Assembly (NCBI GenBank): GCA_964247055.1
Contig: OZ176055.1
Coordinates: 3,720,001 to 3,784,000 of the forward strand
Length of the DNA stretch: 64,000 nt
Direction of reading: 5' to 3'
Source: Paragordius varius
Lineage: Eukaryota; Animalia; Nematomorpha
The position numbers were made by a program, and so were the translations under genes. A model generated the notes under the pieces. The model saw nothing but the letters and a program-made list of their open reading frames with translations. It had not been told where the DNA came from and did not search any database. This document shows, in pieces, positions 1,625 to 24,426 of this stretch (position 1 is the first letter of the stretch; every line of letters starts with the position of its first letter).

Positions 1625-1714
1625 CCCTAGGGATGCCCCTATTTAGGAACGACATTAATATATATCTTGTCGATTTCATTTTTAAATTACTTACTAGCGT
1701 GAATCCTTGTATAA

Positions 1715-3850: not shown

Positions 3851-5121
3851 ATGCACATTTCTTCATAATTTCTGAATTATTATATATTAAAAAAATTATA
3901 TTATTTGTGTAGGCATACTTTGCTAGTTTTCATATATAGCCAGATATAAAGCAAAGGGAATCAATTGATCTATAGTTATTTTTTAGCTTTTTACTGCTAT
4001 TAGCCAATAATATTCTTTAGTTTAAAATATATCCATAATATCCCCTTGTTTAATTAATGTAAAAATTAATCATGATTGAATACAGTTAACATGTATGATA
4101 TACATTTTTAATCATACCAAATTAAATTGTGGAGTTAAAATACATGTTTGCAATGAAATATTATGTTTTGATATAACAAGTTTCATTAGAAAATAACATA
4201 AATTTAATCAATTAAAAATCCTTGTTTTGTTTCCATTATTGTTTTATCCAGTAGTGTATGTTAAAAATTGTTGATAAAATACAGGCATAAAACAATGTTA
4301 TTTCATAAAAGAATAACAAAAATGTTTTTCTATGGATATGTGTACACACACTACATATATATGCTACTGTAAAGTCTTAAAACATACGGGAAAATCGTTT
4401 GATTTCAACCATCTATTGGTTGTTACCATAAGCCATTGTAAATATTTAAACCCCTTTTAATATATTTTTATCCAGTAGCGTAGAGTATAAGAATGCATGT
4501 CCATAATTTAATAAACAAAATATATGGTAAAACATAGAAAAAAATTGTTCGGTTTAAATCATTGTTTGTTACCATACGTTACTTATCAAGGAACTTATTT
4601 TACGGCATCCACATCATTTTATTTACCAACCTATAAGTAAATATTAATTATGGCTAACTTGCAAACAACGCCTATGTCTTTTCCCTAAACACTTTTATAA
4701 TAATTAATATAGAAAATATATGCTAAAAGACATATAATTTTAATCTCCCTTTAGGCCTAATTTACAGTCCATCCCTGTGATATTATTATAATATAAAAAA
4801 GCTAATTAAGTATATCCATCCTTACAATTTTTAACCAATCCATTTACGGAAAGACATGATATGTTGTTAAATATGATAGATTGTATATACATATTGATTC
4901 TAAGTATATATGCGCCCCCTATAGTTATATTATCCGATAAAAAACAGATATGTATATAATGATTAATAAATTGAGTGTAATTACATAAAAATATCTTTAT
5001 GATAGGAAAATTTTGGACATATATAACACCGTAATTAATTAAATATTGAAAGATTTTATAATTGGCCACTAGTGTGAGAATAAAAAATGAATTAATATAA
5101 AGCTGCGGTATTCCTACAAAA

Positions 5122-5138
5122 ATACTTACCTGGCGCGG
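5122..5138 (+). ncRNA. RNU1: U1 snRNA 5' end (nt 1-17), interrupted by retrotransposon insertion
   Basis: ATACTTACCTGGCGCGG is the canonical U1 5' end including the 5'-splice-site-pairing ACUUACCUG. GCGC (nt 12-15) is complementary to the GCGC before the Sm site in the 3' fragment at 9244-9387 (U1 closing helix). Confidence 0.85.
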
Positions 5139-8100
5139 AGCTCTGCCCAAATTTTATTTGATTTTCTGCCTCGCTTTTCAACTTTTTTTACCTTTTTTTG
5201 TTTAACCCTACACATTTCCTCTCAATCCAACTATTTAATCTCTTACAATTTTTTTAACATAATCCAAATTTATTTACCTATATTATGCCAAATGATCATT
5301 CGTCAGATGAGGAGGATAGCCTCAAACTGATAATTGATGAGGAACACTTCCCAAGATTACCCTTTAAGGCGTCTGAATCAACAGCAACCTCCACTCACAC
5401 ACATCACGATATTGGTCTACCACACGAAATTAGCCAACCAGAATCCATTAAAACACCCCATTCCCTAACACATAATCTATCCACAATATATTATAGTTCG
5501 ACGATCAACACAATAGCGGGATCTATGCCACCTACAATCTACACTACCTCAACTACTACGACTAGACCCGGTTTTGAAGCCGCTGCAATGTTCTTTGACG
5601 ATCAACCTTGCGATGACCACTCCTCCTCCGCACTACAGAACATAACCAACATACGTGCCAACAAACGCAAGGCCACGATAGACACATACAATACTAAAAT
5701 TAACAAAACTAATACGTCCATACTAGCTAACAACCCTTTAATGTTATTAAATCAACCTACACTAGATGACAACACCCTCACGTTTTATTTCCCAGTGCCA
5801 AATCATTTCAACTGCCCGCTAGTAACTTGCAAAGAAATATACCGAGGCAGATATTGGACGGCTCAAAAAAGATCGCTACTTCATCACTTAGCCAGAAAAC
5901 ATAATCTATTTCCAAGAATTATAAACCGCTGTTCCCCATGTAACATAATAATAGGAAGCTCTCCAAGCGATCACATTAGATACTGTGAAAACTGGCGAGC
6001 AAATCCACCAATGATTGAGTTCCCGTTTAAATGTCAGATATGTCAAATGTCCTTCCCCAAGAAATCAAACCTAACAGCCCACATGAGACTGCACGCAATC
6101 AAAACAAACCCTATTCCTAAAAAAGTGTCATACTACGACCTAAACTTCGACCCAACCATCAAACAACCGTTACAATTAAACCCGCCTCTTTCAAGCGTAA
6201 CTGTTATCCCCACCTCTGAAACCCAACTCACACAAGACGCATCCTTAGCTCTCCACCCTGACGTCCCTACCAGCAACAGATTCTCGGCACTCGTCAATCT
6301 TAACGACTTTGAAAATTCTCTAGATTATAATAATAATAATGTGACAAAACCAATAAAGTCCCAACAATCTAACAAGAACAACAACACTAATTCTAATACA
6401 CAAACAAATTATCCCCCATCACTGGACCAGCCGATCCCCAACAACAGGAGCTTACTAAAACTTGACTCCAACGCACTAATACAAAAAATCTGCGAAATTC
6501 ATAACACCCCAGATGAATGGAATAATTTTGAAACAATCTTAGCCGAAATAACGATACCATGTCCAGACCCTTCATCACATCCCCGCGGAGATATTCCCCG
6601 CAAACCTAACTACATACAGAACGTCTATAAGTTTAACCGCAAGAAAGCCATCCGACTAATCGTAGAAGGACCCCCCAAATACTGCAATATCGACAGTGAA
6701 ACGATTGAAAATTATTACATAAACAAAATTGGTAACACTCCGCCACTGGTTTTAGAACCAGTCACATTTGAGGGAGAAGAATTATTCGAGCTAGAGCCAT
6801 TTTCTCATTGTGAAATAAAAAAGAAATTATACAAGATGAATAACTCGTCCCCTGGTAATGATGGTATCACTTACAACACGTGGAAAAGATTAGACCCACA
6901 CTGCCTCCTCCTGGAGAAAATTTTCAACACGTGCATCAAATTTGGCAAGATCCCCTCGCATTGGAAAACCACAAAATCTATTCTAATCCCAAAGAAAAAT
7001 TCTGACCTTTCTATTATCAAAAACTGGCGTCCAATAGCCTTGTGCAACACAATATATAAAATATTTACGGCATTATTATCGGATAGAATCAATAATTACG
7101 CAAAACTTAACAACATATTTGACCCAGCACAGAAAGGTTTTATGCCATACGACGGATGCCTAGAACATAACTTCACAATCAGTTCCCGCATAAGGCATAG
7201 TAAAACACATAAAACACCTCTATTTATAACATGGCTGGACATCTCGGCCGCCTTTGATTCTGTTCCTCACAAATGTATTTCCGACTGCCTCCAGAAAATT
7301 GGCCTTAGTAGTAGTTTTACCAACCTTATCAGCGATATCTATAAAAACGCTGCTACCTCTTTCATGACTGGCAATGGTCACACCAAGCTAATAAATTTCA
7401 ACTCTGGCATCAAACAAGGGTGCCCACTATCCGGCACCCTGTTCAACCTCGTCATCAATGACACCCTGAAGTTCCTTAGATTAGACGGCCACGATGCGTT
7501 AGCATACGCTGACGACATATGCCTGATATCGATAGAACACCACAATCACCAACGCGCCATAAATTCAGTACAACAGTCACTGAGCAAGATTGGACTTCTT
7601 CTTAACCCACAAAAGTGTAATTCGCTCATCAGCCACAGCGATCAGACCCCATTCATAATAGACAGCTTGCCAATCAACATAATAAATGAAGCCGACACAA
7701 TCAATTTCCTTGGCAACCCAGTCGGCCTCCACTTTTACAAACAAATCCCTAACTGCGAATTAGTCGATAAAATCCAACAATCCAGTCTGAATCCCGCTCA
7801 AAAACTTGACGCAATAAAAACATTTTTCTACCCTACCCTTACACACATGCTCAGGCATAACCAGCTTAATTATAATATTAGCAACACAATCGATTACAAA
7901 ATATGTAAAGCAGTAAAACAAATCCTCGCAATCCCAAAAAGTGCGGCCAATAGTTACCTATTTGGTTCTCGCAGCAAAGGAGCATTAGGGCTTCCATTAA
8001 CAAAAGATGACATGAACATCTTCCGGATTGACTCGGCCTTCAAATTACTAACCAGCAACGACGAAGTGGTCCGGAACACCGCTGTTCATGAACTAAGTAA

Positions 8101-9243
8101 AACCGCAGGTAAGAGATTCAAACTCAACTCTCCGTCACATAGCGAGCTTGCTTCATTTCTATCAGGGGACAACCCACCCGACTCCATCAACAGAAACAAT
8201 GGGTTCGACAATGTATGGACCAAAGCCCGAATGGCTTCCAGAAGCCTCAAGGTCAGTTGGTCACTCGACCCAACGCCCTCAGTAGCGTTTAACAACATTA
8301 CAATCGATATAAAGAATCGACACAATGTAGTATCGCTCCTGCGCAAGTGGAAAAGAGATCATATCGACCGTGATCTTGAACACACGGCCTCGCAAGGAAA
8401 GGTGATGCAGTGTGTCGCACAACACAAAGCATCACATTTCTTCCTATACAACTTCCGAAACCTAAGATACAGGGACTGGAAGTTCATACACAAAGCAAGG
8501 CTTAACCTCCTACCCACAAAAAGCCAAAGGTTTGCCAATTCATATGATCGAAACTGCCGGAGATGCAACGAGCCCAACGAATCCACAGGCCATATTCTTG
8601 GGTTCTGTGCCAACAGCAGCCGCTTAATTAACTTGCGGCACGATAATATAGTACGTCACATCAAAGAAAACCTCCCATCCAATGCACGACTCATAGCCGA
8701 AAATCAAGCACTGGACTCGTCAAGACTTCGACCCGACCTTGTAGTGGCAGTTGGCAACAAGTGCATCATCATCGATCCAACTGTTACCTACGAGAACGGG
8801 CCTAACGCCCTAGACGAAGCACACAATATTAAGATAGAGAAGTATCGTCACCTCACAGTCTCACTTTCCGGCCAATTTGACGAGGTGTACATCATCCCAA
8901 TCGTCGTGGGCGCACTTGGGTCATGGCATTACAAAAATGAACGACTATTTGAAAATATAAACATGAAAAATAAGTCCGAGATGAGAAAGGATATAGTTAT
9001 CGACACTATTAAATTCTCCTCTGACATATTCTTTGAATTCACTAGTGGGAGAAACTATATCCCCTCTCTCTCGGAGACACCTACCTCCAACTTCATCCGG
9101 TCCAACAGCGAACCCGAAACACAATAATTGTCAATATTCCTATTTCTATATTTAATTCTAATGTGATCCTATATTTATATTTTTTTCAGCATTGTTTTTC
9201 TATATCCATTACATATATTTTTTTTACTAAAATAAATAAATAC
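5139..9243 (+). mobile_element. Full-length RLE-type non-LTR retrotransposon (NeSL/Utopia/R2-like), subfamily A, inserted in U1 snRNA
   Basis: It has a ~146-nt pyrimidine/AT-rich 5' UTR, a single long ORF, and a ~116-nt AT-rich 3' UTR ending AAATAAATAAATAC. It is flanked exactly by the two parts of U1. No TSD is visible. Confidence 0.93.
5285..9127 (+). CDS. Retrotransposon polyprotein: N-terminal zinc fingers, reverse transcriptase, CCHC knuckle, PD-(D/E)xK restriction-like endonuclease
   Basis: 1280 aa, uninterrupted. Zinc fingers: CPLVTC..HLARKH, CSPC..HIRYC, FKCQICQMSFPKKSNLTAHMRLH. RT motifs: SPGNDG, NWRPIALC, QKGF, DISAAFDSV, GIKQGCPLSG, AYADD. CCHC: CRRCNEPNESTGHILGFC. RLE: RHDNIV, LRPDLVV, IIDPTV..KIEKY. 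Confidence 0.96.
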   Translation: MPNDHSSDEEDSLKLIIDEEHFPRLPFKASESTATSTHTHHDIGLPHEISQPESIKTPHSLTHNLSTIYYSSTINTIAGSMPPTIYTTSTTTTRPGFEAAAMFFDDQPCDDHSSSALQNITNIRANKRKATIDTYNTKINKTNTSILANNPLMLLNQPTLDDNTLTFYFPVPNHFNCPLVTCKEIYRGRYWTAQKRSLLHHLARKHNLFPRIINRCSPCNIIIGSSPSDHIRYCENWRANPPMIEFPFKCQICQMSFPKKSNLTAHMRLHAIKTNPIPKKVSYYDLNFDPTIKQPLQLNPPLSSVTVIPTSETQLTQDASLALHPDVPTSNRFSALVNLNDFENSLDYNNNNVTKPIKSQQSNKNNNTNSNTQTNYPPSLDQPIPNNRSLLKLDSNALIQKICEIHNTPDEWNNFETILAEITIPCPDPSSHPRGDIPRKPNYIQNVYKFNRKKAIRLIVEGPPKYCNIDSETIENYYINKIGNTPPLVLEPVTFEGEELFELEPFSHCEIKKKLYKMNNSSPGNDGITYNTWKRLDPHCLLLEKIFNTCIKFGKIPSHWKTTKSILIPKKNSDLSIIKNWRPIALCNTIYKIFTALLSDRINNYAKLNNIFDPAQKGFMPYDGCLEHNFTISSRIRHSKTHKTPLFITWLDISAAFDSVPHKCISDCLQKIGLSSSFTNLISDIYKNAATSFMTGNGHTKLINFNSGIKQGCPLSGTLFNLVINDTLKFLRLDGHDALAYADDICLISIEHHNHQRAINSVQQSLSKIGLLLNPQKCNSLISHSDQTPFIIDSLPINIINEADTINFLGNPVGLHFYKQIPNCELVDKIQQSSLNPAQKLDAIKTFFYPTLTHMLRHNQLNYNISNTIDYKICKAVKQILAIPKSAANSYLFGSRSKGALGLPLTKDDMNIFRIDSAFKLLTSNDEVVRNTAVHELSKTAGKRFKLNSPSHSELASFLSGDNPPDSINRNNGFDNVWTKARMASRSLKVSWSLDPTPSVAFNNITIDIKNRHNVVSLLRKWKRDHIDRDLEHTASQGKVMQCVAQHKASHFFLYNFRNLRYRDWKFIHKARLNLLPTKSQRFANSYDRNCRRCNEPNESTGHILGFCANSSRLINLRHDNIVRHIKENLPSNARLIAENQALDSSRLRPDLVVAVGNKCIIIDPTVTYENGPNALDEAHNIKIEKYRHLTVSLSGQFDEVYIIPIVVGALGSWHYKNERLFENINMKNKSEMRKDIVIDTIKFSSDIFFEFTSGRNYIPSLSETPTSNFIRSNSEPETQ

Positions 9244-9387
9244 CAATCGTGATCATGAAGGCGATTGCCCTAGTTTGAGACGTGTCCATTGCACCTCGGC
9301 CACGTTGAAGACTACGATTGCCCCAAATGGGGGCAAGCCGAGCGCATAATTTCTGGTTGCTGGGCTCTGCGTACGCGCAGAAGCCCT
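9244..9387 (+). ncRNA. RNU1: U1 snRNA 3' part (nt ~19 to end), copy 1
   Basis: Stem-loop I CAATCGT-GATCATGAAG-GCGATTG (U1-70K loop), U1A loop CCATTGCAC, stem III GATTGCCCCAAATGGGGCAAGC, Sm site ATAATTTCTGG, and terminal hairpin GGGCTCTGCGTACGCGCAGAAGCCC. Order and spacing match metazoan U1. Confidence 0.95.
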
Positions 9388-9468
9388 TATATTTCTAATT
9401 GAAAATATAACTTCTCCATTCATTTCGTCCAAAATCTGGCGTTTAGTTCGGATAATTAACTTTAAAAA
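9388..9468 (+). repeat. U1 downstream flank shared by three U1 copies (also 13775-13950 and 16039-16210)
   Basis: Near-identical block TGAAAATATAACTTCTCCATTCATT..GTCCAAGATCTGGCGTTTAGTTCGGATAATTAACTTTAAAAA follows all three + strand U1 3' parts. Confidence 0.9.
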
Positions 9469-9512
9469 CCTTCATGATCACGATTTATTTTTTTTCATTA
9501 AAATAAAAATAT
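9469..9512 (-). repeat. Inverted stub: subfamily-A 3' tail joined to U1 nt ~20-38
   Basis: Reverse complement reads ..TATTTTTATTTTAATGAAAAAAAATA|AATCGTGATCATGAAGG. Confidence 0.75.
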
Positions 9513-9514
9513 AC

Positions 9515-12500
9515 ACGTAATCGATGCGTCCTATGAAGATATTCCCAGACTAATAATTGACAAGGAACACTTCCCCAGTTTACCATGCCACGCGTCAAGT
9601 TCAACTGCTGCCTCTAATTCATTTTCCATCCCACATGTTACCCATGTCATTCTACCGTCTCCCAGTCAGATTACATCGTCCTTATCATCCTATCTTTTAT
9701 CACTCAACATAACTTTAATACATTCTAGTCCAGTTATCAACACAATCGCTTCATCATCTCCAAGCTGTACCACTTCATCAACAATAAGTAGACCTGGTTT
9801 TGAAGCTGCTGCAGTCTTTGATAATCCACCCTGCCAAGACCTCACTAATGAGTGTTTGAATATACCAAGCAATATCAAGAAGTCCAATCCCGCTACACCA
9901 CTCGCACACTCGACAAAAAAAATACACCAAAACTGTGAACCCGGCATTTGGCAAACACCCTACTTTAGTAAATAATAATCTCACCTTTTTTTTCCAGTGG
10001 CAAACCATTTTGTTTGCCCTTACTATGACTGCTTGATGTCCAGCCGCTGCTCAATCTGGACATCACGGAAGTTGTCCCTGATCAGACACCTGAAGGAAAA
10101 GGACAATTGTACCCCAACAGTCACTCACAGATGCTATCCATGCAATGTGGATATTGGGCCAAGCCCTAGTTCACACCTGCCATCCTGCCCCCATTGGGAC
10201 AGCCCCATACCTTTAAAAAGTTTTTTCTACAAATGCTCTAAATGCTCCCTATCGTTCCAGAGGGCTTCAAGCCTACGTAAGCACGAAAGATCCCATGACC
10301 CGCCTCGTAATCCAATTACCAAAACTAAATCATTACTTGATCTGAAATTCCATTCCAATCTAACACACCGCAACACTAATAGCAATAATAATAACGAGGA
10401 CTCAGATGACCTTGTTCAGTCTGACTTCTATAATCCTTCCACACCTCACATTGATCTAAGTAATCGATTCAACATCCTGACCTCGATCGAGTCTGAGTCT
10501 CCCACTACCTCCTCAAACTGGAACATTGGAGATGATAATTCTGCTTCTACCTCCAAACCCTTGAGTAAGAGGAAAAAGGCTGTAAACCAATCCAACATCA
10601 ATCCAAACAAAAAGTCTAATTTTAACCCTATTGATATCACTATCTCATCACTAAATCCACCCTCAGCTGATCCAATTAGCTCCTCACCGAACCTCAAACT
10701 CTAAGCTCGCTCCTCCATAAGCTTACCTTATTTCATTTGGATAATTGGGAAGAAATTAATACATTCGTATCAGAATTAAATGACTTCTTGCATCCATGAC
10801 ACCCATTCAACCCAAGAACACAAACCAGTCCCAGCAAATTTTATTCCCCAAATACATCCAAAAAATATATCATTTCAACAGGAGAAGAGCCATCCGGCTA
10901 ATTACCCAAGGTCCACCAACCTACTGCACCGCCCCGATTGCCGAGATAGAACAACACTTCCAATGCCTATACAATAATACCCTTCCAGCACCATTCATTA
11001 ATAATGATTCTGATTCCCCTCCAATGATGCCGGATATCTCTTTTACTTGTACAGAGGTGTCCGATAAACTTGGGAAAATGGAAAACAGTTAACCAGGACC
11101 TGATGGTATAAGCTACAGGGACCTTAAAAATAAGGATCCTAAAGCTCTTATTCACTAGGCTATTTGATCTCTGTCTCCAACACAGGAAGATTCCCACTTG
11201 AACCACTCCACCACCATTTTAATCCATAAACATGGTGATAAAGCCAGTTTAAAAAATTGGCGACCTATCGCCCTCACCAGTTGCCTGTATCGGCAGTTTG
11301 CAGCCCTAGTCGCCAATAAAATAAGTCAGCATCTCATAAAAAACCAACTTCTAGATCCCCGTCAAAAGGGCTTCCTCCCCCATGACGGGTGCTTTGAGCT
11401 CAATTACATCATAAAACAAACTTGATCTCTTCAAAAAAAGAAAAAACAAGCTCATGTCACGTGCATTGACATTTCAAATGCGTTTGACAAAATCCCGCAC
11501 CCGATCATCCTAAACAACCTGAAAAGGGTAGGTGTATCGGATGGCATCATATCCCTCATTGCAAACTCTCTCTCACTGGTAAAAAACATCTATACGTGCC
11601 GGTAATGAGATCACTTCTCCGATAAACCTTAACAGGGGCATCAAACAAGGTTGCCCCCTCTCAGGGCTCCTGTTTATAATTGGTTTGAATGAGATCATGA
11701 AGCGGGCCTCCAATAATGGGATTGATTTTTATGCATATGCTGATGACATCATATGCAAATTGAACATCAAAGCAACATCAACTTTATTGTTAACGAACTG
11801 AATCTGATTCATCTTAATGTCAATCCTGAAAAATGCTCAAACATCAACGTCAACAGCGATTCCAGATTTTTGATAAATAATATAAGGATCCCCAATCGTG
11901 GGGTCCACCAAACGATAAAATACCTGGGAAACCCAATAGGGTTGTTCCCAACCATCCCACTACCTGATGTCGAATTAGCCGACAAAATTGCCAAATCAAA
12001 TCTCGCTCCTTGGCAAAAGTTGGATGCTATCAAAAGCTCCTACTACCCCACCTTAACATATTACCTCCGTTTAAATCAATTTAATTACGCTACAAGTGAC
12101 AAACTTGAAAGGCAGCTGTTAAGTATGTTACAATACTAGAGCTCCCAAAAGATGCTACTAACAATTGCATCTTTGCATCGAGGAGTAAGGGAGCCCTGGG
12201 CATCCAGCAGATAAAGTGTGATTTCAACATCTTTAAAATTTATGCTGCTTTTAAACTGCTTCATTCAAATGACCCAATGGTCAAAAAATATGCCCAGGAT
12301 GAACTCAATACTACAATAAAAAAAAGGTAGAGACTTACCACGTCTCCATCCCCTGCAATTATGCAATTATCTCTCCGGCAAGGAAGAGGATGCGAATGGC
12401 CATATCAATTACGCGAATGTATGGTCACTTGCTCGCAAGTCCTCAATCTCACTGGGTGGACCTGGGTCCCCCTAGGTGACTCTTCCTTCGCCATTCAGTT

Positions 12501-13630
12501 CCATCATTGATAGTCCCTGATCTAAAAAATTCTCTTGTCCACCTTCTCCGGAATGCAATAAGAGGTGAGAAGGACCGGAATTTCCAACACCTTGCAAACC
12601 AAGGAAGGTTTATGGAATGTGTCGCCTTGGATAAGTCTTCCCATTCCTTCTTATTCTCAGGCAAAAACCTGAGGTGGAGATTTATTTATAGGGCCAGACT
12701 CAAACTTCTCCCTCTTAACAGCAAACCGGGAAGGTTTGACGATACATCTTGCAGAAGGTGCAAGAACCGGATCGAATCTGAATCTCATGTAATAAATTAC
12801 TGCGTGTTAGACACAGGTATTGTCACCGAGCGCCACAACAAAGTGGTCGATTACATTAAATCTATATTACCCAAAAAATTCTCTATTATATCTGAAAATC
12901 TAAAGGTTGATGACTCAAACCTACGTCCCGACCTAGTGATAACTGATAATACAAATTGTTACATTATCGACCCCACAATCTTCTATGAGAACAGAGTTTT
13001 ATCTTTGGACGATGCATTTAACACAAAGCTCACAAAATACGATCATTTGATTTGCTCCTTCTCTGAAAAATACTCTAAAGTTGAGATTATCTCAGTGGTG
13101 ATAGGCGCTCTAGGCTCATGGTACCCCCGAAATGACAAACTTTTGAATGCACTTGGGATAAAAAACCCTAACCGTATCAAACAAGACCTCATTGCGGAAG
13201 TACTAAAATTTTCATGTGACATCTACCACCTTTTCATCAGTAGTCGGAACATCCAACCGCCAAGTGTGACTCCCATAGTCGACCCTTTCAACGAATAGCT
13301 TCCTTGCTCAAGTCAAATTAAATCTATCCATCGCATTTCATCCCCATTGTTACTCTTTATATTTTATTACATATAATTTATTAAAACATTCAGTTTTATA
13401 TTACAACAAAATATGTGATATGTTTTCTTTGCAATCTCCCATTCAAGCTTTGTCTTCTTTCCCCTATTATTATTATTTACATATATATCATTTTAAAATT
13501 CAAAATGAGTGTTAACTTTGCTACATATTATATATCCTATATGTATGATCCAGAAGTAATTCCTACCTTTGTCTTTCCTTTTACAGCAATGTATTTAAAA
13601 TATTTATATTATTTATTTAATAAATTGTAA
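9515..13630 (+). pseudogene. Near full-length, frameshifted RLE retrotransposon, diverged subfamily B, ending at a U1 3' part
   Basis: N-terminus LIIDKEHFPSLP is homologous to copy A. Zinc-finger ORF 9997-10704. RT fragments 10796-12139 (NWRPIAL, QKGF, GIKQGCPLSG, AYADD). CCHC+RLE ORF 12507-13298 (CRRCKNRIESESHVINYC, LRPDLVI, IIDPT). Its ~330-nt 3' UTR differs from that of A. Multiple stops and frameshifts. Confidence 0.92.
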
Positions 13631-13774
13631 CAATCGTGATCATGAAGGCGATTGCCCTAGTTTGAGACGTGTCCATTGCACCTCGGCCGCGTTGAAGACT
13701 ACGATTGCCCCAAATGGAAGCAAGCCGAGCGCATAATTTCTGGCTGCTGGGCTTTGCGTACGCGCAGAAGCCCT
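13631..13774 (+). ncRNA. RNU1: U1 snRNA 3' part (nt ~19 to end), copy 2
   Basis: Differs from 9244-9387 at only a few positions and starts at the same CAATCGTGATCATGAAGG. Confidence 0.95.
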
Positions 13775-13949
13775 TATATTTTCAATACAATTTATCAATT
13801 TCTCAAAAATAAAGGCGAATTGATATTAAAATTATATGTAATAGGTCATTGAAAATATAACCTCTCCATTCATTCCGTCCAAGATCTGGCGTTTAGTTCG
13901 GATAATTAACTTTAAAAAACAAAAGTAACACATATCAACCCGCAAACAA

Positions 13950-14905
13950 CCTTCATGATCACGATTTTTTATATTTATTTTGATAAAAATAAAAACATAA
14001 GGGTTACAAAACAATGCTAATAAGAAAATAAATAGGGGATCACATGGACATAATTTATATATTAATAAAAATTGAGCGTTATTGTGTTACGGATTCGCAG
14101 TAGGACCGTGGGATGAGGTTGGAGGTGGGTGTTTCCGGGAGGGAGGGGATATAGTTTCTACCACTGGTAAATTCAAAGAATCCAAGTGCGTACATGACGA
14201 TTATTGGCCGGAAGAAACTGTGAGGTGACGATTCTCTATTGTGTGCTTCGTCTAGGGCGTTGGGTCCGTTCTCGTAGCTGACAGTTAGATCGATGATAAT
14301 GCACTTATTGCCAACTGCACCACGAGATCGGGTGGAAGTCTTGACGAGTCCAGCGCTTGATTTTCGGATATTAGTCGTGCATTGGATGGGAGGTTTTGTT
14401 TGATGTGACGCACTATATTATCGTGTCATAAGTTAATTAATCGACTGCTGTTGGAGCAGAACCCAAGAATATGGCCTGTGGATTCGTTGGGCTCGTTGCA
14501 TCTCAGGCTGTTGCGATCATATAAATTGGCAAACCTTTAGCCTTTTGTGGGTAGGAGATAAGGCCTTGCTTTGTGTATGAACTCGGAAGTTGTATGGGAA
14601 GAAATGTGATGCTTTGTGTTGTGCGACACACTGCATTACCTTTCCTTGAAAGCCGGTGTGTTCGAGATCACCGTCGTTGTGATATCTTTTCCACTTTCGC
14701 AGGAGCGATACTGCATTTTATCGATTGTTTATATCGATTGTAATGTTGTTAAAAGCTATGGAAAGCGTTGGGTCGGGTGACCAACTGACCTTGAAGCTTT
14801 TGGAAGCCATTCGGGATTTGGTTCAAACGTTGTCAAACCCATTGTTTCTGTTGATGGAGTCGGGTGGGTTGTCCCCTGAATGATAGAAACGAAGCTAGCT
14901 CGCTA
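13950..14905 (-). mobile_element. Inverted 3' fragment of a subfamily-A-like element with U1 nt ~20-38 stub (13950-13966)
   Basis: Reverse complement matches ~8140-9120 of copy A with internal deletions, then a 3' UTR, then AATCGTGATCATGAAGG. Confidence 0.88.
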
Positions 14906-15955
14906 TCGTCGTGGGCGCACTTGGATCATGTCATTACAAAAACGAAAGATTATTGAAAACATTAATATGAAAAATAAGGCTGAGATGAGAACGGATATAG
15001 TCATCGACACCATTAAATTTTCGTCTGCTAGATTCTTTGAATTTACCAGTGGTAGAAAATATATCCCCTCTTTCCCGGAACCAGCGAAAATGGAAAAGAT
15101 ATCACAACGACGGGATCTCGAACACACCGCCTTTCAAGGAAAGGTAATGTAGTGTGTCGCACAACACAAAGCATCACATTTCTTCCCATACAACTTCCGA
15201 GTTCTTACACAAAGCAAGGCTTTATCTCCTACCCACAAAAAGCTAAAAGTTTGCCATTTATATGATCGCAACAGCTTGAGATGCAACGAGCCCAACGAAT
15301 CCACAGGCCATATTCTTGGGTTCTGCACCAACAGCAGTCGATTAATTAACTTATGACACGATAATATAGTGCGTCACATCAAACAAAACCTCCCGTCTAA
15401 TGCACGACTAATATCCGAAAATCAAGCGCTCTCGTCAAGATTTCGACCCGATCTCATAGGTGGCAGTTGCCAACAAGTGTATTATCATCGATCTAACTGT
15501 CACCTACGAGAACGGGGCCAACGCCCTAGACGAAGCACACAATATTAACAAGAAGTATCGTCACCTCACAGTCTCACTTTCTGGGCATTTGACGAGGGTT
15601 ACATCATCCAAATCGTCGTGGGCGAACTTGGATCATGGCACTACAAAAACGAAAGATTATTCGAAAACATTAATATGAAAAATAAGGCTGAGATGAGAAC
15701 GGATATAGTTATCGACACCATTAAATTTTCGTCTGATAGATTCTGTGAATTTACCAGTGATAAAAAATATATCCCCTCTTTCCCGGAAACACCCACCTCC
15801 AACCTCATCCCACGGTCCCACTGCGAATCCGTAACACAATAACGCTCAATTTTTATTAATATATCAATTCTGTTCATGTGATCCCTATTTATATTTTTAT
15901 TACCATTGTTTTTTTATAACCCTTATATTTTTATTTTTATCAAAATAAATACAAA
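14906..15955 (+). mobile_element. Rearranged 3' fragment of a subfamily-A-like element
   Basis: 14906-15075 matches ~8900-9075 of A. 15085-15840 matches ~8345-9125 (ORFs 15460-15678, 15618-15842). A 3' UTR follows, then U1. Confidence 0.88.
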
Positions 15956-16038
15956 AATCGTGATATGAAGGCGATTGCCCTAGTTTGAGAAGTGTCCATT
16001 GTTTCTGGTTGCTGGTCTCTGCGTACGCGCAGAGGCCC
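15956..16038 (+). pseudogene. RNU1: U1 snRNA 3' part with internal deletion, copy 3
   Basis: AATCGTGATATGAAGGCGATTGCCC..GTCCATTG is joined directly to TTTCTGGTTGC..GCGTACGCGCAGAGGCCC, so stems II/III are largely deleted. Confidence 0.85.
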
Positions 16039-16224
16039 TTATATTGTCAATACAATTTGTCAAAAATAAACGCCTTTAATTTATATAAAATTTAATCTAA
16101 TACATGTCATTGAAAATAACTTCTCCATTCATTCTGTCCAAGATCTGGCGTTTAGTTCGGATAATTAACTTTAAAAAAACAAAAGTAATACATAGCAACC
16201 CGCAAACAACCAACTCAATAATCC

Positions 16225-16700
16225 TCAGCGGAGAACAGATTAAAACCGTAAACATTTAACGTATTTAGGCAATATTATAAACAATGACAACAACTTAACT
16301 CCAGAAATAAAACGAAGAATTGCCATTGCAAAAGCAATTACATTCAAATACAACTAGATTTAGACATTACATGATATCAACCTAAAAAATCATGTTAATT
16401 AAGGCAACAATATTCCCCACATTACTATATGGGGGAAAGCTGGACGCTGAAAAAATATGACGAACGAATAATTTTCTTTCGAACTATAATGTTTGGAGGA
16501 AACTTCTCGAAACAAAATGGTCAGACAACTTTTCTAACTCAACCATTTTAAATAATATTAATCCTGAAATGTCACTGATGGGCAGCCTAATACACCAAAA
16601 ACTATCCTATTTTGGCCACATTATGAGATCTAAAAAATAAGTGGTCCTCGTAAATTATAAAGAAGAACTCGTTAGATGAATAACATCCTCAAAGAGACCA
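16225..16700 (+). mobile_element. RTE/BovB-like non-LTR retrotransposon 3' fragment
   Basis: Degraded peptides YLGNII..EIKRRIAIAK, IFPTLLYG.ESWTL and YFGHIMR are typical of the RTE-clade C-terminus. Confidence 0.7.
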
Positions 16701-16882
16701 ACCAAACATAAAATTTAATCCTTATTTAAGTCATTGTAAAATAAAATTTTAAATGTAAAATCAACTAAATTAATACAGATTCCTTCTAATCTATCCTTAG
16801 TATCAAACAATATATTTTATCATATCTTTTAAAACTTTTACCTATTACTCGCAAGACTAGCTACCAAACGTTGTTATATTTC

Positions 16883-16993
16883 CCTAACTCAGAGAAACCA
16901 AAAATTAGGCTTTGACCCCATTTAGGACAATCGCAGTCTCAAACGTGGCCGAGAGGACACGTGTCAAACCAGGTCGCCTTCATGATCATGATT
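16883..16993 (-). pseudogene. RNU1: Degenerate U1 3' part, copy 4
   Basis: Reverse complement AATCATGATCATGAAGGCGA..GGTTTGACACGTGTCC..CTCGGCCACGTT..GCGATTGTCCTAAATGGGG..TAATTTTTGG. Confidence 0.8.
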
Positions 16994-17940
16994 AAAAAAT
17001 TGAATATATGTTCATATGCCTATGTTGCTGTAAGAAAACCCAATAATAATTTAATTAATTATATCATATTCTAAATATTATGCATTAAAAACAATGCGAA
17101 TATACATGTGATTGTGTGATAGCACAATAATGTAAAAAAGAGGAAGGAAAACGGATAATTAAGAGTATAGGGTGGTTGTGAAATTACATTATACTCATAA
17201 GAAATATTTCTTCCACTAATAAACACGTACATATCACGCTTTGATAATGATAAGATATTATATAATTTTTGTCCGATTTTTTGTATCAAGCATATTTAAT
17301 ATTTTATACGAGCGGTATACCAGGATCCTAAAGCTTCTGTTTGTTATTTAACGTTTAACAAACGCTCAAAGTTTGCTATTTGCGTATACCTTATTATTTT
17401 GTTGTTAAAGGCATCTTCCTTAGATACTTATCCATCTTCATATGGTATGGTTGGATCTAATATAAAGCGGTTTTGGGTATCTGCTATAATTATAAGATCC
17501 GGTCTAAAGCTAGAAGCATTAACTGGTTGATTCTAAGAAATTATTTTAAATTTTGCGGGGACTATTGATATTTATTAACTACTATATTATGTTTCGTGAG
17601 AGGTTCGCTCGCATGGAAACAATAGTTGCTTGCATAAAAGCCGGTTTCATTCCTGTTGTTATTTAGTTTTTGGTTGCCTAAATGCCATTTAATGGTAGAA
17701 TATTTTTTGCTCGATAAATAAATCTCTAGTCATAAAATTTTAAATCTTGCTCATTAAATCGAAATTGATGGGATGTTATATCGAGGGCAACCTGTCGATT
17801 TGAGAGATGGTAAAATTATTTTTGTTTTCTTTTAACATAGCTCTTAGTTAGCTATATGCTTTAAATCAGCATTGGATAGAGAAGCATCTGTAAGATATCT
17901 TTAACAAGAAATAAATCGAGGGTTTTTTCCAAATTGAAAT
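16994..17940 (-). pseudogene. Degraded RLE element 3' end, subfamily C (B-like), abutting U1 copy 4
   Basis: Remnants RFIYRAK, FRPDLII, ILDPTIPYEDG, DAFNNK and ALGSWY. A further + strand piece of the same subfamily lies at ~17975-18165. Confidence 0.8.
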
Positions 17941-18576
17941 AATTCACTTTAATCATAGGGGCTTTGGGATCCTGGTAGACGCGCTCGGATAAAATTTTAG
18001 ACATATATGATACAGAAAATCGGACAAATTAAAGGGGATATCACCATTATTAAAGCGTGCTGTGATATATATCACAAATTTATTAGTGGACAAAGCATCC
18101 AATGATGACGGCATTATCAGAAATTATTCCACATACTCTTAATCTAGGCATTCCCCCCCCCCTTCTTTACATAATTTTGAGTAGCAAGGTATAAAGGGTA
18201 TATGAGATCCACGTCATTACTGCCCATTAAATACGTCTCTTGATGTACACCAGTGAATGGTTGTTCAGTAGCAGCCGCCTAGTTTCTCGGGGGTTGAGTT
18301 CACTTCGAGGGAAATAATGATATGATATACATATAAGATATGTAAAAATATTTGGTATAAACTAGTTTTTTCTCTACAGAAAAAATCAAATCTTACTATA
18401 TGCTATGTATTCATACAAATGGTTCATTTTTATAGTATGTAATAACATTTTTTTAAATAATTTATATATTGCAACCTAATTTATTATAAAGACTTTGTGA
18501 AATACAGATTATTTTTTATATTTTATTAACTTGATGACTAATAATTGAAACAAGTTTTACCTCGTGTTGGATATTG

Positions 18577-18700
18577 AGGGCTTCTGCGCGTCTAAGACTA
18601 GCAACCAAAAATTATGCGCTCAACGTACCCCGTATTTGAAATAATCGCAGCCAAGGTATAATGGACACGTCTCTAACTAGAACAATCGCTTTCATAATCC
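18577..18700 (-). pseudogene. RNU1: Degenerate U1 3' part, copy 5, preceded by a C-type 3' UTR (18701-18850)
   Basis: Reverse complement GATTATGAAAGCGATTGTTCTAGTTAGAGACGTGTCCATT..GAGCGCATAATTTTTGGTTGC..ACGCGCAGAAGCCCT. The upstream tail resembles 16995-17120. Confidence 0.8.
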
Positions 18701-19241
18701 AAAACTGCAAAAATATATTTATTAAAATATATTCATATGCTTATGTGATTGTAAAGAAAATAAATGAATAAATTTATTGTATCACATTCTAAATACGAGC
18801 AAATATGTATGTGATTGTGGGGACTCATTTTGTTTAATTTTAATTGAATATCCCTATCATGCATTTTTTATTGAAATTGTTTCAATTACTACACAAATTG
18901 TTTTTAGAGTTTAAAAAATTTAAAGGGGAATTCGGCATAAACTGAATAATAAATGTTTAGGGTTAGATTCAAGGTGTGAATGGATTTTACCTAAAAAGGT
19001 CCAATTTCATTATGCTAATTCATTTAATGATTCGGATTATCCTCTCAAAAAAATATTTGGAAATTGATTGACTGGGAAATGATATATTTTTAGTAACAAA
19101 CACCTTTATATTTTATCATATCTTTTAAACATACCCTTCTTTATTTACCCACTTAGTCGACTTATCAACTCAATGGTAGGTAATGCTAATAGCTCACAAG
19201 ACGCGCTACCAAAACTTGATATAAATTCCCCTAACTTACAT

Positions 19242-19332
19242 CAGCCAAAAATTATTCGCCGGCTTTCTCCCATTTGGGGCAATCGGACTCTTAAACGTGA
19301 CATCAAACTAGTGGAATCGCCTTATGCGATTT
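19242..19332 (-). pseudogene. RNU1: Degenerate U1 3' part, copy 6
   Basis: Reverse complement AATCGCATAAGGCGATTCCACTAGTTTGA..CGATTGCCCCAAATGGG..GCCGGCGAATAATTTTTGGCTG. Confidence 0.72.
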
Positions 19333-21040
19333 ATGTAGAAAATAAGTATAAGAAATATGCTAAAAATTAATCATATAGAGATATAGATATTAGATCATTA
19401 AAGAGTGAAAGTAAATGCTTTATGATGACATAGTGGGAATAGGCGTTGGGGTTGTTGGTGTGGGAGAGGAAGCTATTGATAAGGGTGAAATAGTTTTTAT
19501 CGCCGATGAATTTGGAAAATATAACATCGGATAATTTGATATCAATAATTATACCCTTTCTCAACTAGGCTATATTTTTCATTTTGAATAAGTCGAAAAA
19601 TCGCCCATTTTTAAATACCATGATCCAGGAAGGCCTACGACGATCGGGATGATGTGGACCTAATATCATTCGGAACGCTGCTATGAGTTGATTGTATTTT
19701 TGCAGCTTATTATTCTGTGACTTGTCTAGAGCCTAGGTCCGTTTTAATATGTGACTAATGGATCAATGATAAGGCACTGCCCGTACCCACCACGGGTGTA
19801 AGTCTAGAGTCCAGCACTTGGTTTTCAGATATTAACCGCTAGTTGGGTGTGAGGTTTTGTTTGATAGATCGCACGAAGTTGTCGTATCGCAGGTTGATCA
19901 GGCGACTGCTGTTGGTGCTGTACCTAAAAAGGTGGGGTGCGGATTTGTTTAGCTCGTTGCATCGCCGACAGCTGTTTTATTTTTAGCTATTTGTGAGTTA
20001 TAGAAATACGCGCCTTGTGTATCCCAGTCCCTTCAGGTTCCTGAAGACAGAATGAAATGAGAGGCAAGATATTAGCAAACACATTGCATTATTTTTTCCT
20101 GCTAAAAGGTCTCGAGATCGCTGTCAATTTGATATCGTTTACTATTTCGATTGTAATGTAAACGTGGGCGTTGGAACGAGCTACCAGCCGGCTTTTCGAA
20201 GCCCTTCGGGCTTTGCACACATTATAAATCCATTGGTTAAATTCGAGTTTGGGTGGGTTATACCTCGAGAGAAACGATGCTAGCTCATAAGGCGACAAGG
20301 AATTTAGTATGATGCGGTTTTACTCAGTTCAAAATCTCCGCTTCCTCGTTACTTAAACGCTGAATCTACCGGAATATGTTCATATTGTCTTTCGTCAAAG
20401 AAACTCCTAGTGTCTTTGCTACGTGAGCTAAAAAGTTCATGTCTTCCGCACTTTTTGGGACGACGAGAATTTTTTTTAACAGTTTTACATTAGTAGTGCT
20501 AAATGTAGTTAAGTTGGTTATAGCTAAGCATAAGGGTTAGGGTTGGATAGAAGAAATTTTTTATTGCATCGAGTTTTTGCGCGGGATTGAGATTGGATTG
20601 GATGATTTTGTCGTCGAGTTCATAGTTTAGAACTTGATTGAAGAAATGGAGGCCGATTGGATTGCCTAGGAAATTGCTTGTTTCTGTCATATTTATTATT
20701 TTTGGCGAATCAGCTATTGAAAATGGTATAGGATCGCTGCGATTGATTAATGCAACACTTTTTTGCAGATTCAGAAAAAGTTTAATTTTACTGGTGGACA
20801 CCTAGCTTATAGCGTCTTGATGTTTGTCATGATCTTGTGATAACACATAGATCGTCGGCGTATGCCAAAGCATATGCGCTGTATAACCTTGGGCACTTAA
20901 GCGTATTATTGAGAACGAGGTTGAAGATGATTCCAGATAGTGAGCAGCCTTGTTTAATCTCAGAAGAGAATCGTATTAGATTAATGAAACCATTTCTGTT
21001 CATATATGATAGAGTTTCGGTAAATATCGCCGAAGAGTAA
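19333..21040 (-). pseudogene. Degraded RLE element (RT to 3' end), subfamily D, abutting U1 copy 6
   Basis: IKQGCSLSG, AYADD (20827-21117), QKLDAIKNFFYPTL (20499-20801), VCKARRAS, RHDNFV, KGIIIDIKLSD. Confidence 0.85.
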
Positions 21041-21059
21041 AGTAAAATTAACGCTAAAG

Positions 21060-22190
21060 AAAAGCTTCCTATTTGTAACATGGCTGGACATTTCGGCCGC
21101 CTTTGACTCTGTTGCACACAGAAATATCTCCAATGTCTTCAGAAAATTGGCCTTGGTAGTATTTTTACCAACCTCATCAGCGATATCTACCAAAACGCTG
21201 CCATTTATGACCAGAAAAGGTCCCACAAAGTTAATACGGTTCAGTATGGCATTAAACAAGGGTGCCCACTGTCCGGCACTCTGTTCAACCTCGTCATCAA
21301 TGACACTCTGAAGCTTCTAAGATTAGACGGCCACGATGCGTTAGCATACGCTGAAGACATATGCCTGCTATCGATAGAACACCACAAACATCAAAGCGCC
21401 ATAAATTCAGTACAACAGTCACTGAGCAAGATCGGACTTCTTCTTAATCCACAAAAGTGTAATTTGCTTATCAGCCACAGCGATCAAACCCCATTCATTA
21501 TAGACAGCTTGCCAATCAACATAATCAACGAAGCAGACACAATCAATTTCCTAGGCAACCCAGTCGGCCTCCACTTTTACAAACAAATCCCTAACTGCGA
21601 ATTAGTCGATAAAATTCAACAATCCAGCCTGAATCCCGCTCAAGAACTTGACGCAATAAAAACCTTTATTTACCTTACCCTAACCCGCATGCTCAGGCAT
21701 AATCAACTTAATTATAATATTAGTAATACAATCGATTATAAAATATGTAAAGCAGTAACAAATCCTCGCAATCCTGAAAATTTGGTTCAGGTAGCAAAGG
21801 GGCATTAGGGCTTCATTTAACGAAGGATGATATGAACATATTCCGGATCGAATCGGCGTTTAAAAGTGAAGCCGCAGGTAAGAGAGTCAAACTCAATCCT
21901 CCGTCACCTAGCGAGCTAGCTTCGTACATCAGGGGACATCCCACTCGACTCTATTTAAGTATCAATTGGTTCTGTAACGTTTAGATCAAAGCCCGAATGG
22001 TCTCGAAAAGCTTCAGAGTCAGCTGATCACTCGACCCAAGGCCCTCAATGGCGTTTAATATTACAATCGACATAAACAACCGACACAGAGTAGTGTATCT
22101 CCAGCGCAAGTGGAAAAGAAATCACATCGATCGTGATCTTGAACGCACATCGCAAAGAAAAGTAATGCAATGTGTTGCACTACAAAATTC
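21060..22190 (+). pseudogene. Internal fragment of subfamily A (RT domains to thumb)
   Basis: High nucleotide similarity to ~7215-8450 with deletions. ORF 21464-21808 is nearly identical to the matching part of the A protein. Confidence 0.9.
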
Positions 22191-22446
22191 ATCCCACTTC
22201 TTTTGTTTAACCTCGTTATCAATAATATGCAAAAGCTTCTAAGGTTAAACGGCCATGATACTTTAGTTTTCGCTAAAGACATATAATTGCTATTGAAAAA
22301 CCACAACAAATACCATAAGGCTATAAACTTGGTCCACCAGTTTCTAAACAAAATTTAACTTAGTCTAAATTTGTAAAAATGTATTTCATTAATCAATCAC
22401 AGAGACCCTACACAATTTTCAATAGCTAACTTGCCAATCAAAATAA

Positions 22447-24426
22447 CACTGTGCAACAAATTTTATCCTTTTCTTTTAGACCAGAGTGAAAATTACGACA
22501 TCTTATAGAGAATTTTTTTCTGAAAATAATGATATATTTAATATTTTCCTAGCACTTTTTCACAAGCCGCTAAAAGGTTTCAAAAATCCAAAAACCATCA
22601 AAAATGCCTGTTTTTGTAACCCTATAACTTTTTGAATTATATAGCTTATTATCTTTTTTTGGGGGGATATTACAAATTATATTTTAAAATTCATGTAACA
22701 TTTTAAAATTTTTAAAAGTCTCTACTACTTTTTGATTTATTTGGAAAAAACGAAACTTAGCTCCAAAAAAATAGCGTTTCAAAACAATGAAAAATTAAGA
22801 GACATACTGGCATCATTTGATTGACAGCTTTTCATTATACATTACTAAAATAATAATATTTAATTGCTTTTTTATAAATATGAAAAATAGTATATATATT
22901 TAACACTTGGATACAACACACTCATTTTAGTCCTTCGATTCAAATTGGGGTAGTTGGATACCCCAGGCCTTTTTAAAAACAAATACTTTAAAAAGTATGG
23001 AAATATTCAAAACCATGGCAAAATTTTGCACTTATATAACATTTATAAACCGAAATATATAAAAAATTTTCAAAAATATTTGATATTACTTATTTTAAGC
23101 TAAACCCAAAGGTAAAAATTTCGTCAACGTGACATGTGTCAAATTGTAAAATTAAAAAATAATACAAAATAAACCGCTTTTCTATTTCAATCAATGTTAG
23201 ATGTAAATTATATAAAAAATTAGCTTTAGTTTTACCTTTAAAATCAAATGAAGACGATATTTTGCAAAAATTTTGTAAAAAAATGGCGTCGAAGTAGTTT
23301 AACTTTTTTTTCAAAACAAAATTTTATCAAGATATTTTGGCATATTTATATAATTTTTATCAAGATAGAAGCATAAATTTAAATTGGGACCGTTTCCTTC
23401 TGTATTTTTTAAAAATATTAATTTAAATTTAGTCTGGGGTATTTAGATACCCCAATTTGAATCGAAGTGTTGATGTTATAATAATAAATTTAATAAAATG
23501 ATAATATTTTTAAATTTATTAATGTTAATGGATAATAAACTCTGTGTTTGAATTAATATTATATGATTTTTAGTAATATTTCAATTATGTTATTATATAT
23601 TTTTGTTATTATTTTAAAGTAAATTTATTTATAAACTACTAAGATTTTAAAAAATTTAATACAGAAATGATTTAAAAATTATAAATATATTAAAATATTT
23701 TTAATTAAGACACAATATACGAATATATTTATTATGAAAGAAAAAAACAAATGAATGCCTTTTTTGCTCTGTTAGTTCAACATTTCAGTTTATATTTATT
23801 TGCATGTTTATATTTTTTTGTTGAAAAAAACTTTCGTATATTAAAAAACAAAATATCATGATTCATATAATCACGTACAATACATAATAAATAAATTTGC
23901 ATGTTTAAAAGTATTTCTTATTTATAAATAATATATATCAAATTAATATTATATATTTATTATTTTATTAATTATACTATAAATATACTAATTTATTCCT
24001 AAAATTAATATTTACATTTTTTAATTAAACATGAAATTTTTCCATTTTGTTATGTATAAAAAATGGTATGGTGCCTGCACGTCTCTTAATTTTTCATTGT
24101 TTTGAAACGCTATTTTTTTGGAGCTAAGTTTCGTTTTTTCTAAATAAATCAAAAAGTAGTAGAGACTTTTAAAAATTTTAAAATGTTACATGAATTTTAA
24201 AATATAATTTGTAATATCCTCCAAAAAATAAATAATAAGCTATAAAATTCAAAAAATTATAGGGTTACAAAAACAGGCATTTTTGATGGTTTTTGGATTT
24301 TTGAAACCTTTTAGCGGCTCGCGAAAAAGTGCTAGGAAAATATTAAATATATCATTATTTTCAGAAAAAAATTCTCTATAAGATGTAGTAATTTTCACTC
24401 TGGTCTAAAAATCGTGTTGCACAGTG
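22447..24426. mobile_element. MITE with ~350-bp TIRs (Tc1-like CACTG ends) containing a nested MITE
   Basis: CACTGTGCAAC...GTTGCACAGTG|TA. Arms 22474-22800 vs 24080-24411 are inverted repeats. Confidence 0.8.
22904..23469 (-). mobile_element. piggyBac-like MITE, copy 1 of 3
   Basis: TTAA|CACTTGGATACAA...TTGAATCGAAGTG|TTGA. Homologous over ~570 bp to 33888-34469 and 44045-44624, in the opposite orientation. Confidence 0.8.

What the first reader, a model, noticed from the sequence alone, without database searches (positions are those of the whole stretch)
9244..19332. Eight element-tail/U1 junctions from several diverged subfamilies all start near U1 nt 19-20
Seen: junctions at 9244(+), 9485(-), 13631(+), 13966(-), 15956(+), 16993(-), ~18700(-, degenerate) and 19332(-). 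All but the degenerate one begin (C)AATC(G/A) at the 5' side of stem-loop I. The upstream elements (A, B, C, D) have unrelated 3' UTRs and visibly different proteins. Inference: target specificity is old and was kept through diversification into coexisting subfamilies competing for one site, as with multiple R2 lineages in one rDNA locus. Copy F (1715-3850) has no U1 after it, and some junctions may be DNA-level duplicates.
Basis: partly seen in the sequence, partly recalled or inferred. Interest (0 to 1): 0.85.

Follow-up and report, generated by a model that had tools for sequence, protein, structure and literature searches.

The report
Diversified U1-targeting Utopia retrotransposon lineage
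Several long-diverged subfamilies of one jumping-gene lineage all insert at the same spot (base 20-22) of U1 splicing-RNA genes, although their closest known relatives insert in U2 genes, so this is a natural, long-kept switch of target site that I did not find reported.

Summary
The junctions are real, but they lie at U1 nt 20-22, not 19-20, and represent 5-6 independent insertions, not eight. Copy A (5139-9242) is a full-length ZF-RT-RLE non-LTR retrotransposon with an intact 1280-aa ORF, sitting between the two halves of a U1 gene. A public contig shows the empty site; there is no target duplication. Junctions 9485, 13966 and 15956 are most likely DNA-level copies of one C insertion (C1/C3 share a frameshift and two stops). 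The core inference holds: A-B share 44% aa with saturated dS while their U1 halves are 96.6% identical, and A-E share 63%. Decay levels show the A/C/E and B/D branches inserting over the same long period. All window copies form one clade (100/100) nested among Utopia elements (AU p=0.0002). Nine of nine relatives with a readable 3' end insert at U2 nt 38/39, so U1 targeting is derived. Coexisting families are known for Utopia; I found no report of a U1 target for retrotransposons (Repbase and Fell 2025 not checkable). This scan already reported the U1-targeting lineage about 3.1 Mb away in this genome.

The parts
5122..5138 (+). U1 snRNA gene 5' half, nt 1-17 (nt 1-20, to 5141, if a G18A change is allowed); only U1 5' half in the window
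   Evidence: empty-site joint 5138->GG->9243 in run X1
5139..9242 (+). Element A, full length; pyrimidine-rich 5' UTR, one ORF, AT-rich 3' UTR, no target-site duplication
5285..9127 (+). Intact 1280-aa ORF of A: two N-terminal zinc-binding motifs plus a C2H2 finger (aa 248-270), RT (aa 568-810), CCHC knuckle, PD..D restriction-like endonuclease
9243..9388 (+). U1 3' half after A, nt 20-165 (junction 1)
9469..9520 (-). Junction 2: about 35 nt of a C-type tail plus U1 nt 22-38, fused to the U1 downstream flank; copy of junction 4
9521..13630 (+). Element B, nearly whole coding region, 5' UTR lost, 5 stops and 19 frameshifts, 44% aa to A
13631..13775 (+). U1 3' half after B, nt 21-165, 96.6% to the half after A (junction 3)
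13950..13966 (-). U1 nt 22-38 after C1, fused to the downstream flank of the U1 after B (junction 4)
13967..14904 (-). Element C1, 5'-truncated, 87% aa to A
14905..15083 (+). C2, internal endonuclease fragment of the C subfamily, no tail
15085..15955 (+). Element C3, 5'-truncated; shares a 23-bp frameshift deletion and two stops with C1
15956..16041 (+). U1 3' half after C3, from nt 22, with a 58-nt internal deletion also seen in public contigs (junction 5)
16893..16993 (-). Decayed U1 after D1, from nt 22, about 88%; non-standard sequence after the Sm site shared with junction 8 (junction 6)
16994..17830 (-). Element D1, 5'-truncated, 47% aa to B, 34% to A
17901..18102 (+). D1b, inverted endonuclease fragment of the D subfamily, no U1 after it
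18577..18699 (-). Decayed U1, about 81%, alignable from nt 28 (start between nt 21 and 28), standard stem-loop IV (junction 7)
18706..18830 (-). D2, D-type 3' tail only, no coding part detected
19239..19331 (-). Decayed U1 after E, from nt 22, about 88% with deletions (junction 8)
19332..21055 (-). Element E, 5'-truncated, 63% aa to A, 12 stops and 19 frameshifts
21060..22203 (+). A2, internal fragment of a further A-like subfamily (82% aa to A), no 3' end
22206..25292 (+). E2, decayed E-like internal fragment split by an inverted-repeat element (22474-24410); no 3' end
1627..3834 (+). Copy F, old member of the same clade, split by an inverted-repeat element (2049-3265); no convincing U1 or U2 after it

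Best explanation
A lineage of RLE (R2-group, NeSL clade) non-LTR retrotransposons derived from U2-specific Utopia switched once to a site in U1 snRNA genes, between nt 20 and 22 at the bulge of stem-loop I, and kept that site while splitting into at least five subfamilies in two deep branches (A/A2/C/E and B/D). Shown: the junctions, the empty site, the lack of target duplication, monophyly inside Utopia, coding-level selection between subfamilies, staggered ages. Inferred from the R2 group: the single protein binds the U1 gene with its N-terminal zinc fingers, nicks the bottom strand with the endonuclease and copies its RNA from that nick (target-primed reverse transcription), which gives fixed 3' and variable 5' ends. 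Inferred: full-length copies are transcribed from the U1 promoter left upstream. The local cluster is a graveyard made by 5-6 insertions at different times plus later duplication, inversion and deletion of DNA.
For: A lies between U1 nt 1-17 and nt 20-165, and a public contig joins the halves. U1 starts at nt 20, 21, 22, 22, 22 after A, B, C, D1, E; five independent starts within 3 nt of 145 have a rough chance of 5e-7. A-B 44% aa, mismatches by codon position 44/34/66%; A-E 25/19/50%; A-C dS 0.26-0.37, dN 0.06-0.07. Window copies are one clade, 100/100; a tree with the U2 Utopias held together without them is rejected, p-AU 0.0002. Nine of nine relatives with a 3' end stop at U2 nt 39. U1 decay follows element decay: A 0% (0 lesions), B 3.4% (1.9 per 100 aa), C 3.5% (3.2), D1 12% (4.1), E 12% (5.8).
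Against: One window only; A's U1 half served as the reference, so its 0% is by construction. Three copies (F, A2, E2) show no U1 junction, though A2 and E2 lack a 3' end. Only A has a U1 5' half. Rearrangement is common here and junctions 6 and 8 share a derived U1 3' region under different tails, so recombination at the U1 homology could have shuffled tails. No second species, no RNA evidence, no biochemical test. The group for the AU test was named after an earlier tree had been seen, and the window rows have an odd amino-acid make-up.
Confidence: 0.88

Rival explanations
1. Only one or two subfamilies target U1; the others became attached to U1 halves by recombination, gene conversion or deletion inside an unstable array.
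For: Many inversions and deletions; junctions 2, 4 and 5 are copies; junctions 6 and 8 share a derived U1 3' region under different tails; B has lost its 5' end by a deletion.
Against: Each of A, B, C, D, E keeps its own complete tail up to the same U1 base; recombination within U1 can swap what lies downstream but cannot create a new tail/U1 junction; U1 decay matches the decay of the element in front of it.
Confidence: 0.06
2. The subfamilies were once mobile with loose specificity and carried a short piece of U1 at the 3' end of their RNA, so the 'junction' is copied along with the element rather than made anew at U1 genes.
For: Junctions 2 and 4 carry only 17 nt of U1; Utopia families with weak specificity exist.
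Against: A sits in a split gene with an empty site on record; after B, C3 and D2 the U1 runs to its 3' end and, for B and C3, on into the gene's downstream flank; the 17-nt pieces belong to the same dead C copy as the long U1 at 15956, so they were shortened later.
Confidence: 0.03
3. All junctions descend from a single insertion by segmental duplication and neutral decay.
For: True for C1/C3 (private changes 5/6/6 and 7/7/8 by codon position).
Against: A-B, A-E and B-D diverge far more than their U1 halves and with third-position excess.
Confidence: 0.01
4. The divergence is recent and fast (high substitution rate in this host), so the target switch is young although several subfamilies exist; this rival concerns age only.
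For: Long stem branch (0.55 per site) and odd amino-acid make-up of the window rows; decay of B adds to the distance; no relative above about 41% over long stretches in 1.84 billion representatives.
Against: A-B path 1.27 per site, against 0.56 between an Ornithodoros and an Ixodes element and 1.20 between two spider elements; insertions with 12-19% neutral decay exist in both branches.
Confidence: 0.25

Closest known systems
Utopia (NeSL clade, RLE non-LTR retrotransposons; Kojima and Jurka 2015, PMC4640811)
   Same: One ORF with N-terminal zinc fingers, RT, CCHC and RLE; snRNA-gene target; precise 3' ends; no target duplication as in arthropod Utopia; several families kept in one genome, disrupted genes lacking their 5' part as in Phytophthora; phylogenetically nested.
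   Different: Target is U1 nt 20-22, not U2 nt 38/39; the two sites share little sequence (best register 15/49); the conserved S/T/N(-1), G3, N6 of the Utopia C2H2 finger are replaced in both A and B.
NeSL of nematodes (spliced-leader RNA genes)
   Same: Proposed to have branched off Utopia by a change of target to another small-RNA gene: the precedent for this switch.
   Different: Different target; NeSL has a Ulp1-like protease, not detected in A.
Dada-U1 DNA transposons of fish (PMC8869645)
   Same: Insert specifically in U1 genes; two distant sublineages coexist in zebrafish.
   Different: Cut-and-paste DNA transposons with 6-7 bp duplications and an unrelated target sequence; no RT.
Multiple R2 lineages in 28S rDNA
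   Same: Diverged lineages sharing one site in one genome; same enzyme group.
   Different: R2 has a Myb domain and targets rDNA with hundreds of copies; U1 genes are few.
Keno (Tx1 clade)
   Same: [quoted passage not shown]
   Different: APE endonuclease, U2 target.

Membership tests
RLE non-LTR retrotransposon (R2 group) | Single ORF with RT followed by CCHC knuckle and PD..D/ExK-type endonuclease | tested here: met
RLE non-LTR retrotransposon (R2 group) | Fixed 3' junction, 5'-truncated copies, no LTRs | tested here: met
RLE non-LTR retrotransposon (R2 group) | Target-primed reverse transcription activity | not testable with these tools
   inferred from family
Utopia | RT phylogeny inside the Utopia lineage | tested here: met
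   Utopia identity of neighbours taken from their U2 nt 39 junctions, Repbase reference sequences not available
Utopia | One to three N-terminal zinc fingers homologous to those of Utopia | tested here: met
   28-37% identity over the finger region
Utopia | Insertion at U2 snRNA nt 38/39 | tested here: not met
   no U2 target sequence in the window above chance; junctions are in U1
Utopia | No target duplication (arthropod type) or 20-bp duplication (reptile type) | tested here: met
   no duplication at A; one full-length copy only
R2 proper | 28S rDNA target | tested here: not met
   no rRNA match in the window
R2 proper | Myb domain | tested here: inconclusive
   no Pfam hit; no structure predicted
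NeSL proper | Spliced-leader gene target and Ulp1-like protease | tested here: not met
Dada-U1 | DDE transposase, 6-7 bp target duplication | tested here: not met

The most novel reading that the evidence does not exclude
An undescribed, phylum-old branch of Utopia has been retargeted from U2 to a dissimilar site in U1 genes through changes in its N-terminal zinc fingers, and has kept two deep lineages alive on a handful of U1 genes, beside U2-targeting Utopia in the same genome: a natural pair for mapping how R2-type integrases choose and change targets.
Probability: 0.55. Interest if true: 0.75.

Novelty: new variant of a known kind. Interest (0 to 1): 0.62.

Why it matters
Kojima and Jurka listed only Keno and Utopia (U2) and the DNA transposons Dada-U1 and Dada-U6 as snRNA-gene specialists. 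A U1-specific retrotransposon adds a new target for the R2 group and a clean case of target switching with a known ancestor state, a dissimilar new site and an intact ORF that can be assayed. R2-type proteins are being engineered for site-specific gene insertion, so natural retargeting bears on which domains set specificity. Persistence of several lineages on a low-copy, essential gene family is an open puzzle raised for Utopia; here it comes with relative dates.

Tried and rejected
Close relatives in other species: none above about 41% over long stretches among 1.84 billion representatives or above 39% over the RT-RLE region in the clustered set; two metagenome scans were blank. Runs labelled organisms B, C, D hold pieces identical to the window at low depth, so I did not count them as related species. 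U1 or U2 remnants after F, E2 and D1b: not above chance except a weak 11-nt match after F. Similarity of U1 and U2 target sites: weak (a shared T-x-ATCA in one of three registers), not accepted as an explanation. A structured ribozyme at the 5' end of A: nothing stable predicted, no Rfam hit; not a sensitive test. The 17-nt U1 pieces as natural homology-primed off-target insertions: rejected in favour of later deletion, because C1 shares its lesions with C3. Fell et al. 2025 (Nature) is not held and Repbase cannot be searched. No structure prediction was run.
Full report
Observation. Rfam finds two U1 matches, 9224-9388 and 13609-13775, both lacking the true 5' end. BLAST and nhmmer add decayed pieces at 15956, 16993, 18699 and 19331, and two 17-nt pieces at 9485 and 13966. 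The only U1 5' half in the window is at 5122-5138, directly in front of element A. A public DNA run contains a contig that joins 5138 to 9243 with GG between: this is the empty site. The intact gene is 165 nt, folds as U1 and has human-like numbering. On it the U1 parts begin at nt 20 (A), 21 (B), 22 (9485, 13966, 15956, 16993, 19331) and between 21 and 28 (18699). Because the C tail ends AAATAAATAC before its extra As, the C at nt 20 after A probably belongs to the element, which puts the cut at 20/21 in the two best-kept copies; the others read 21/22, by decay or by a one-base shift. Nucleotide 21 is the bulge in stem-loop I. At the 5' junction of A either 2-3 bases are lost or nt 1-20 are kept with one G-to-A change; there is no target-site duplication.

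How many events. Not eight. C1 (13967-14904, minus) and C3 (15085-15955, plus) share a 23-bp frameshifting deletion and two stop codons, and their private changes have no codon bias, so they are copies of one dead insertion; copying of a dead template in trans is not excluded. The junctions at 9485 and 13966 show the same rearrangement, U1 cut at exactly nt 38 and fused to the downstream flank of a neighbouring U1, and the 35-nt tail at 9486 is C-type. These three are most simply one event. The tails at 16994 and 18706 are one subfamily (D), but their U1 copies have different 3' regions; the one at 16993 shares a non-standard region after the Sm site with the U1 behind E. That leaves five or six independent junctions: A, B, C, D (one or two), E. 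Five starts within 3 nt of 145 have a rough chance of 5e-7. F has no convincing U1 after it; A2 and E2 have no 3' end.

Subfamilies. Broken reading frames were read with X at each break. A has an intact 1280-aa ORF with N-terminal zinc fingers, RT, CCHC knuckle and restriction-like endonuclease. A-B: 44% identity over 793 codons, mismatches by codon position 44/34/66%, dS saturated. A-E: 63%, dS about 1.5, dN 0.25. A-C: 86%, dS 0.26-0.37, dN 0.06-0.07. A-A2: 82%. D1 is nearer B (47%) than A (34%). The U1 halves after A and B differ by only 3.4%. Both deep branches therefore inserted early (D, E) and later (B, C), which is the evidence for coexistence. Competition is not shown.

Relatives. The best protein matches are 38-41% identical and come from spiders, ticks, crustaceans, insects and unlabelled assemblies. 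Ten loci were fetched; all nine that reach the 3' end stop at TCTGTTCTTA, U2 nt 39, the Utopia site described in PMC4640811. In maximum-likelihood trees the window copies form one clade (100/100) within a strongly supported group of U2-flanked elements, with further U2-flanked elements outside it; one change of target suffices. Holding the U2 elements together without the window copies is rejected (p-AU 0.0002; the group was chosen after an earlier tree, and the targets of the outgroup rows are unknown). U1 targeting is thus derived from U2 targeting. The A-B path is 1.27 changes per site, against 0.56 between a soft-tick and a hard-tick element and 1.20 between two spider elements: deep, but inflated by decay of B and perhaps by a fast host rate, so no absolute age follows.

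Mechanism. By established knowledge of the R2 group, the protein binds the target with its N-terminal fingers, nicks the bottom strand and primes reverse transcription there; this is inferred, not shown. The U1 and U2 sites are not similar, so recognition must have changed. One lead: in the last C2H2 finger, 42 relatives have S/T/N at position -1 (41), G at 3 (38) and N at 6 (40), whereas A has K, N, A and B has R, S, K. A and B differ from each other there, so this finger has either lost its role or is not the only determinant. U1 and U2 genes lie side by side in two of the fetched loci (L004, L008), which offers a route for the switch. Transcription of A from the U1 promoter, giving an RNA that starts with U1 nt 1-17 and could end at the U1 3' end, is plausible but untested; no RNA run holds the stretch. 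A looks recent: intact frame, pieces identical in two samples, and an empty site present in the same run, though that empty gene may be another locus.

Known versus new. Coexisting families on few snRNA genes are known for Utopia in Phytophthora, a target switch out of Utopia is proposed for NeSL, and Dada DNA transposons use U1. Searches of the paper library found no retrotransposon with a U1 target; Fell et al. 2025 and Repbase could not be checked. The lineage works like Utopia and descends from it but fails its defining target, so I file it as a new variant. Earlier notes of this scan report the same U1-targeting lineage about 3.1 Mb upstream and a U2 Utopia elsewhere in this genome; I could not fetch that DNA and do not count them as support. 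What this window adds is the depth of the split (44% aa), the relative dates and the corrected count. The host was not determined here; earlier notes guess a horsehair worm.

Verdict. Observation partly confirmed, interpretation supported with corrections. New variant of a known kind; interest 0.62.

Noticed in passing
window 2049-3265: Non-coding element with 324-bp inverted ends (94% alike) inserted in copy F; MITE-like or foldback.
   Followed up: no
window 22474-24410: Second element with 343-bp inverted ends (96% alike) inserted in copy E2.
   Followed up: no
window 16212-16700: Decayed fragment of an unrelated LINE (RT C-terminal region of RTE/CR1 style) next to the U1 flank; read by eye from translations.
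   Followed up: partly
window 16780-16993 and 19090-19331 (minus): Two decayed U1 copies share a non-standard region after the Sm site and a different downstream flank, yet follow different element subfamilies (D and E): a U1 variant hit twice, or recombination.
   Followed up: partly
window 5139-5177 (runs X6, X7): One low-depth contig in each of two runs matches the first 37-39 nt of element A, continues with a related pyrimidine-rich sequence and is preceded by a U1-like head with altered bases 6-11: possibly the 5' junction of a sister subfamily in a diverged U1 copy. Only 30-letter loose ends were visible.
   Followed up: no
L003 2535, L004 1409, L008 2018 versus L001 4284: Among U2-targeting relatives some show the 20-bp target duplication described for reptile Utopia and others none, so that trait varies within this part of the tree.
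   Followed up: partly
L004 460-622 and L008 8588-8751: Intact U1 genes lie within 1 kb of Utopia-split U2 genes in two unrelated assemblies.
   Followed up: no
window 41700-42197 and 49960-50667 (minus): Two paralogous ORFs without Pfam hits sharing a motif-rich C-terminal part; the second starts with a hydrophobic, signal-peptide-like stretch.
   Followed up: no
window 54544-56523 (minus): Exons of a eukaryotic alpha carbonic anhydrase gene (Pfam hit at 56110-56523).
   Followed up: no
window 31506-32405 (minus): 299-aa lysine-rich low-complexity ORF, no Pfam hit.
   Followed up: no
window 3863-3873: Exact 11-nt match to the U1 Sm-site region just after copy F; 7 of 300 shuffles do as well, so probably chance.
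   Followed up: yes
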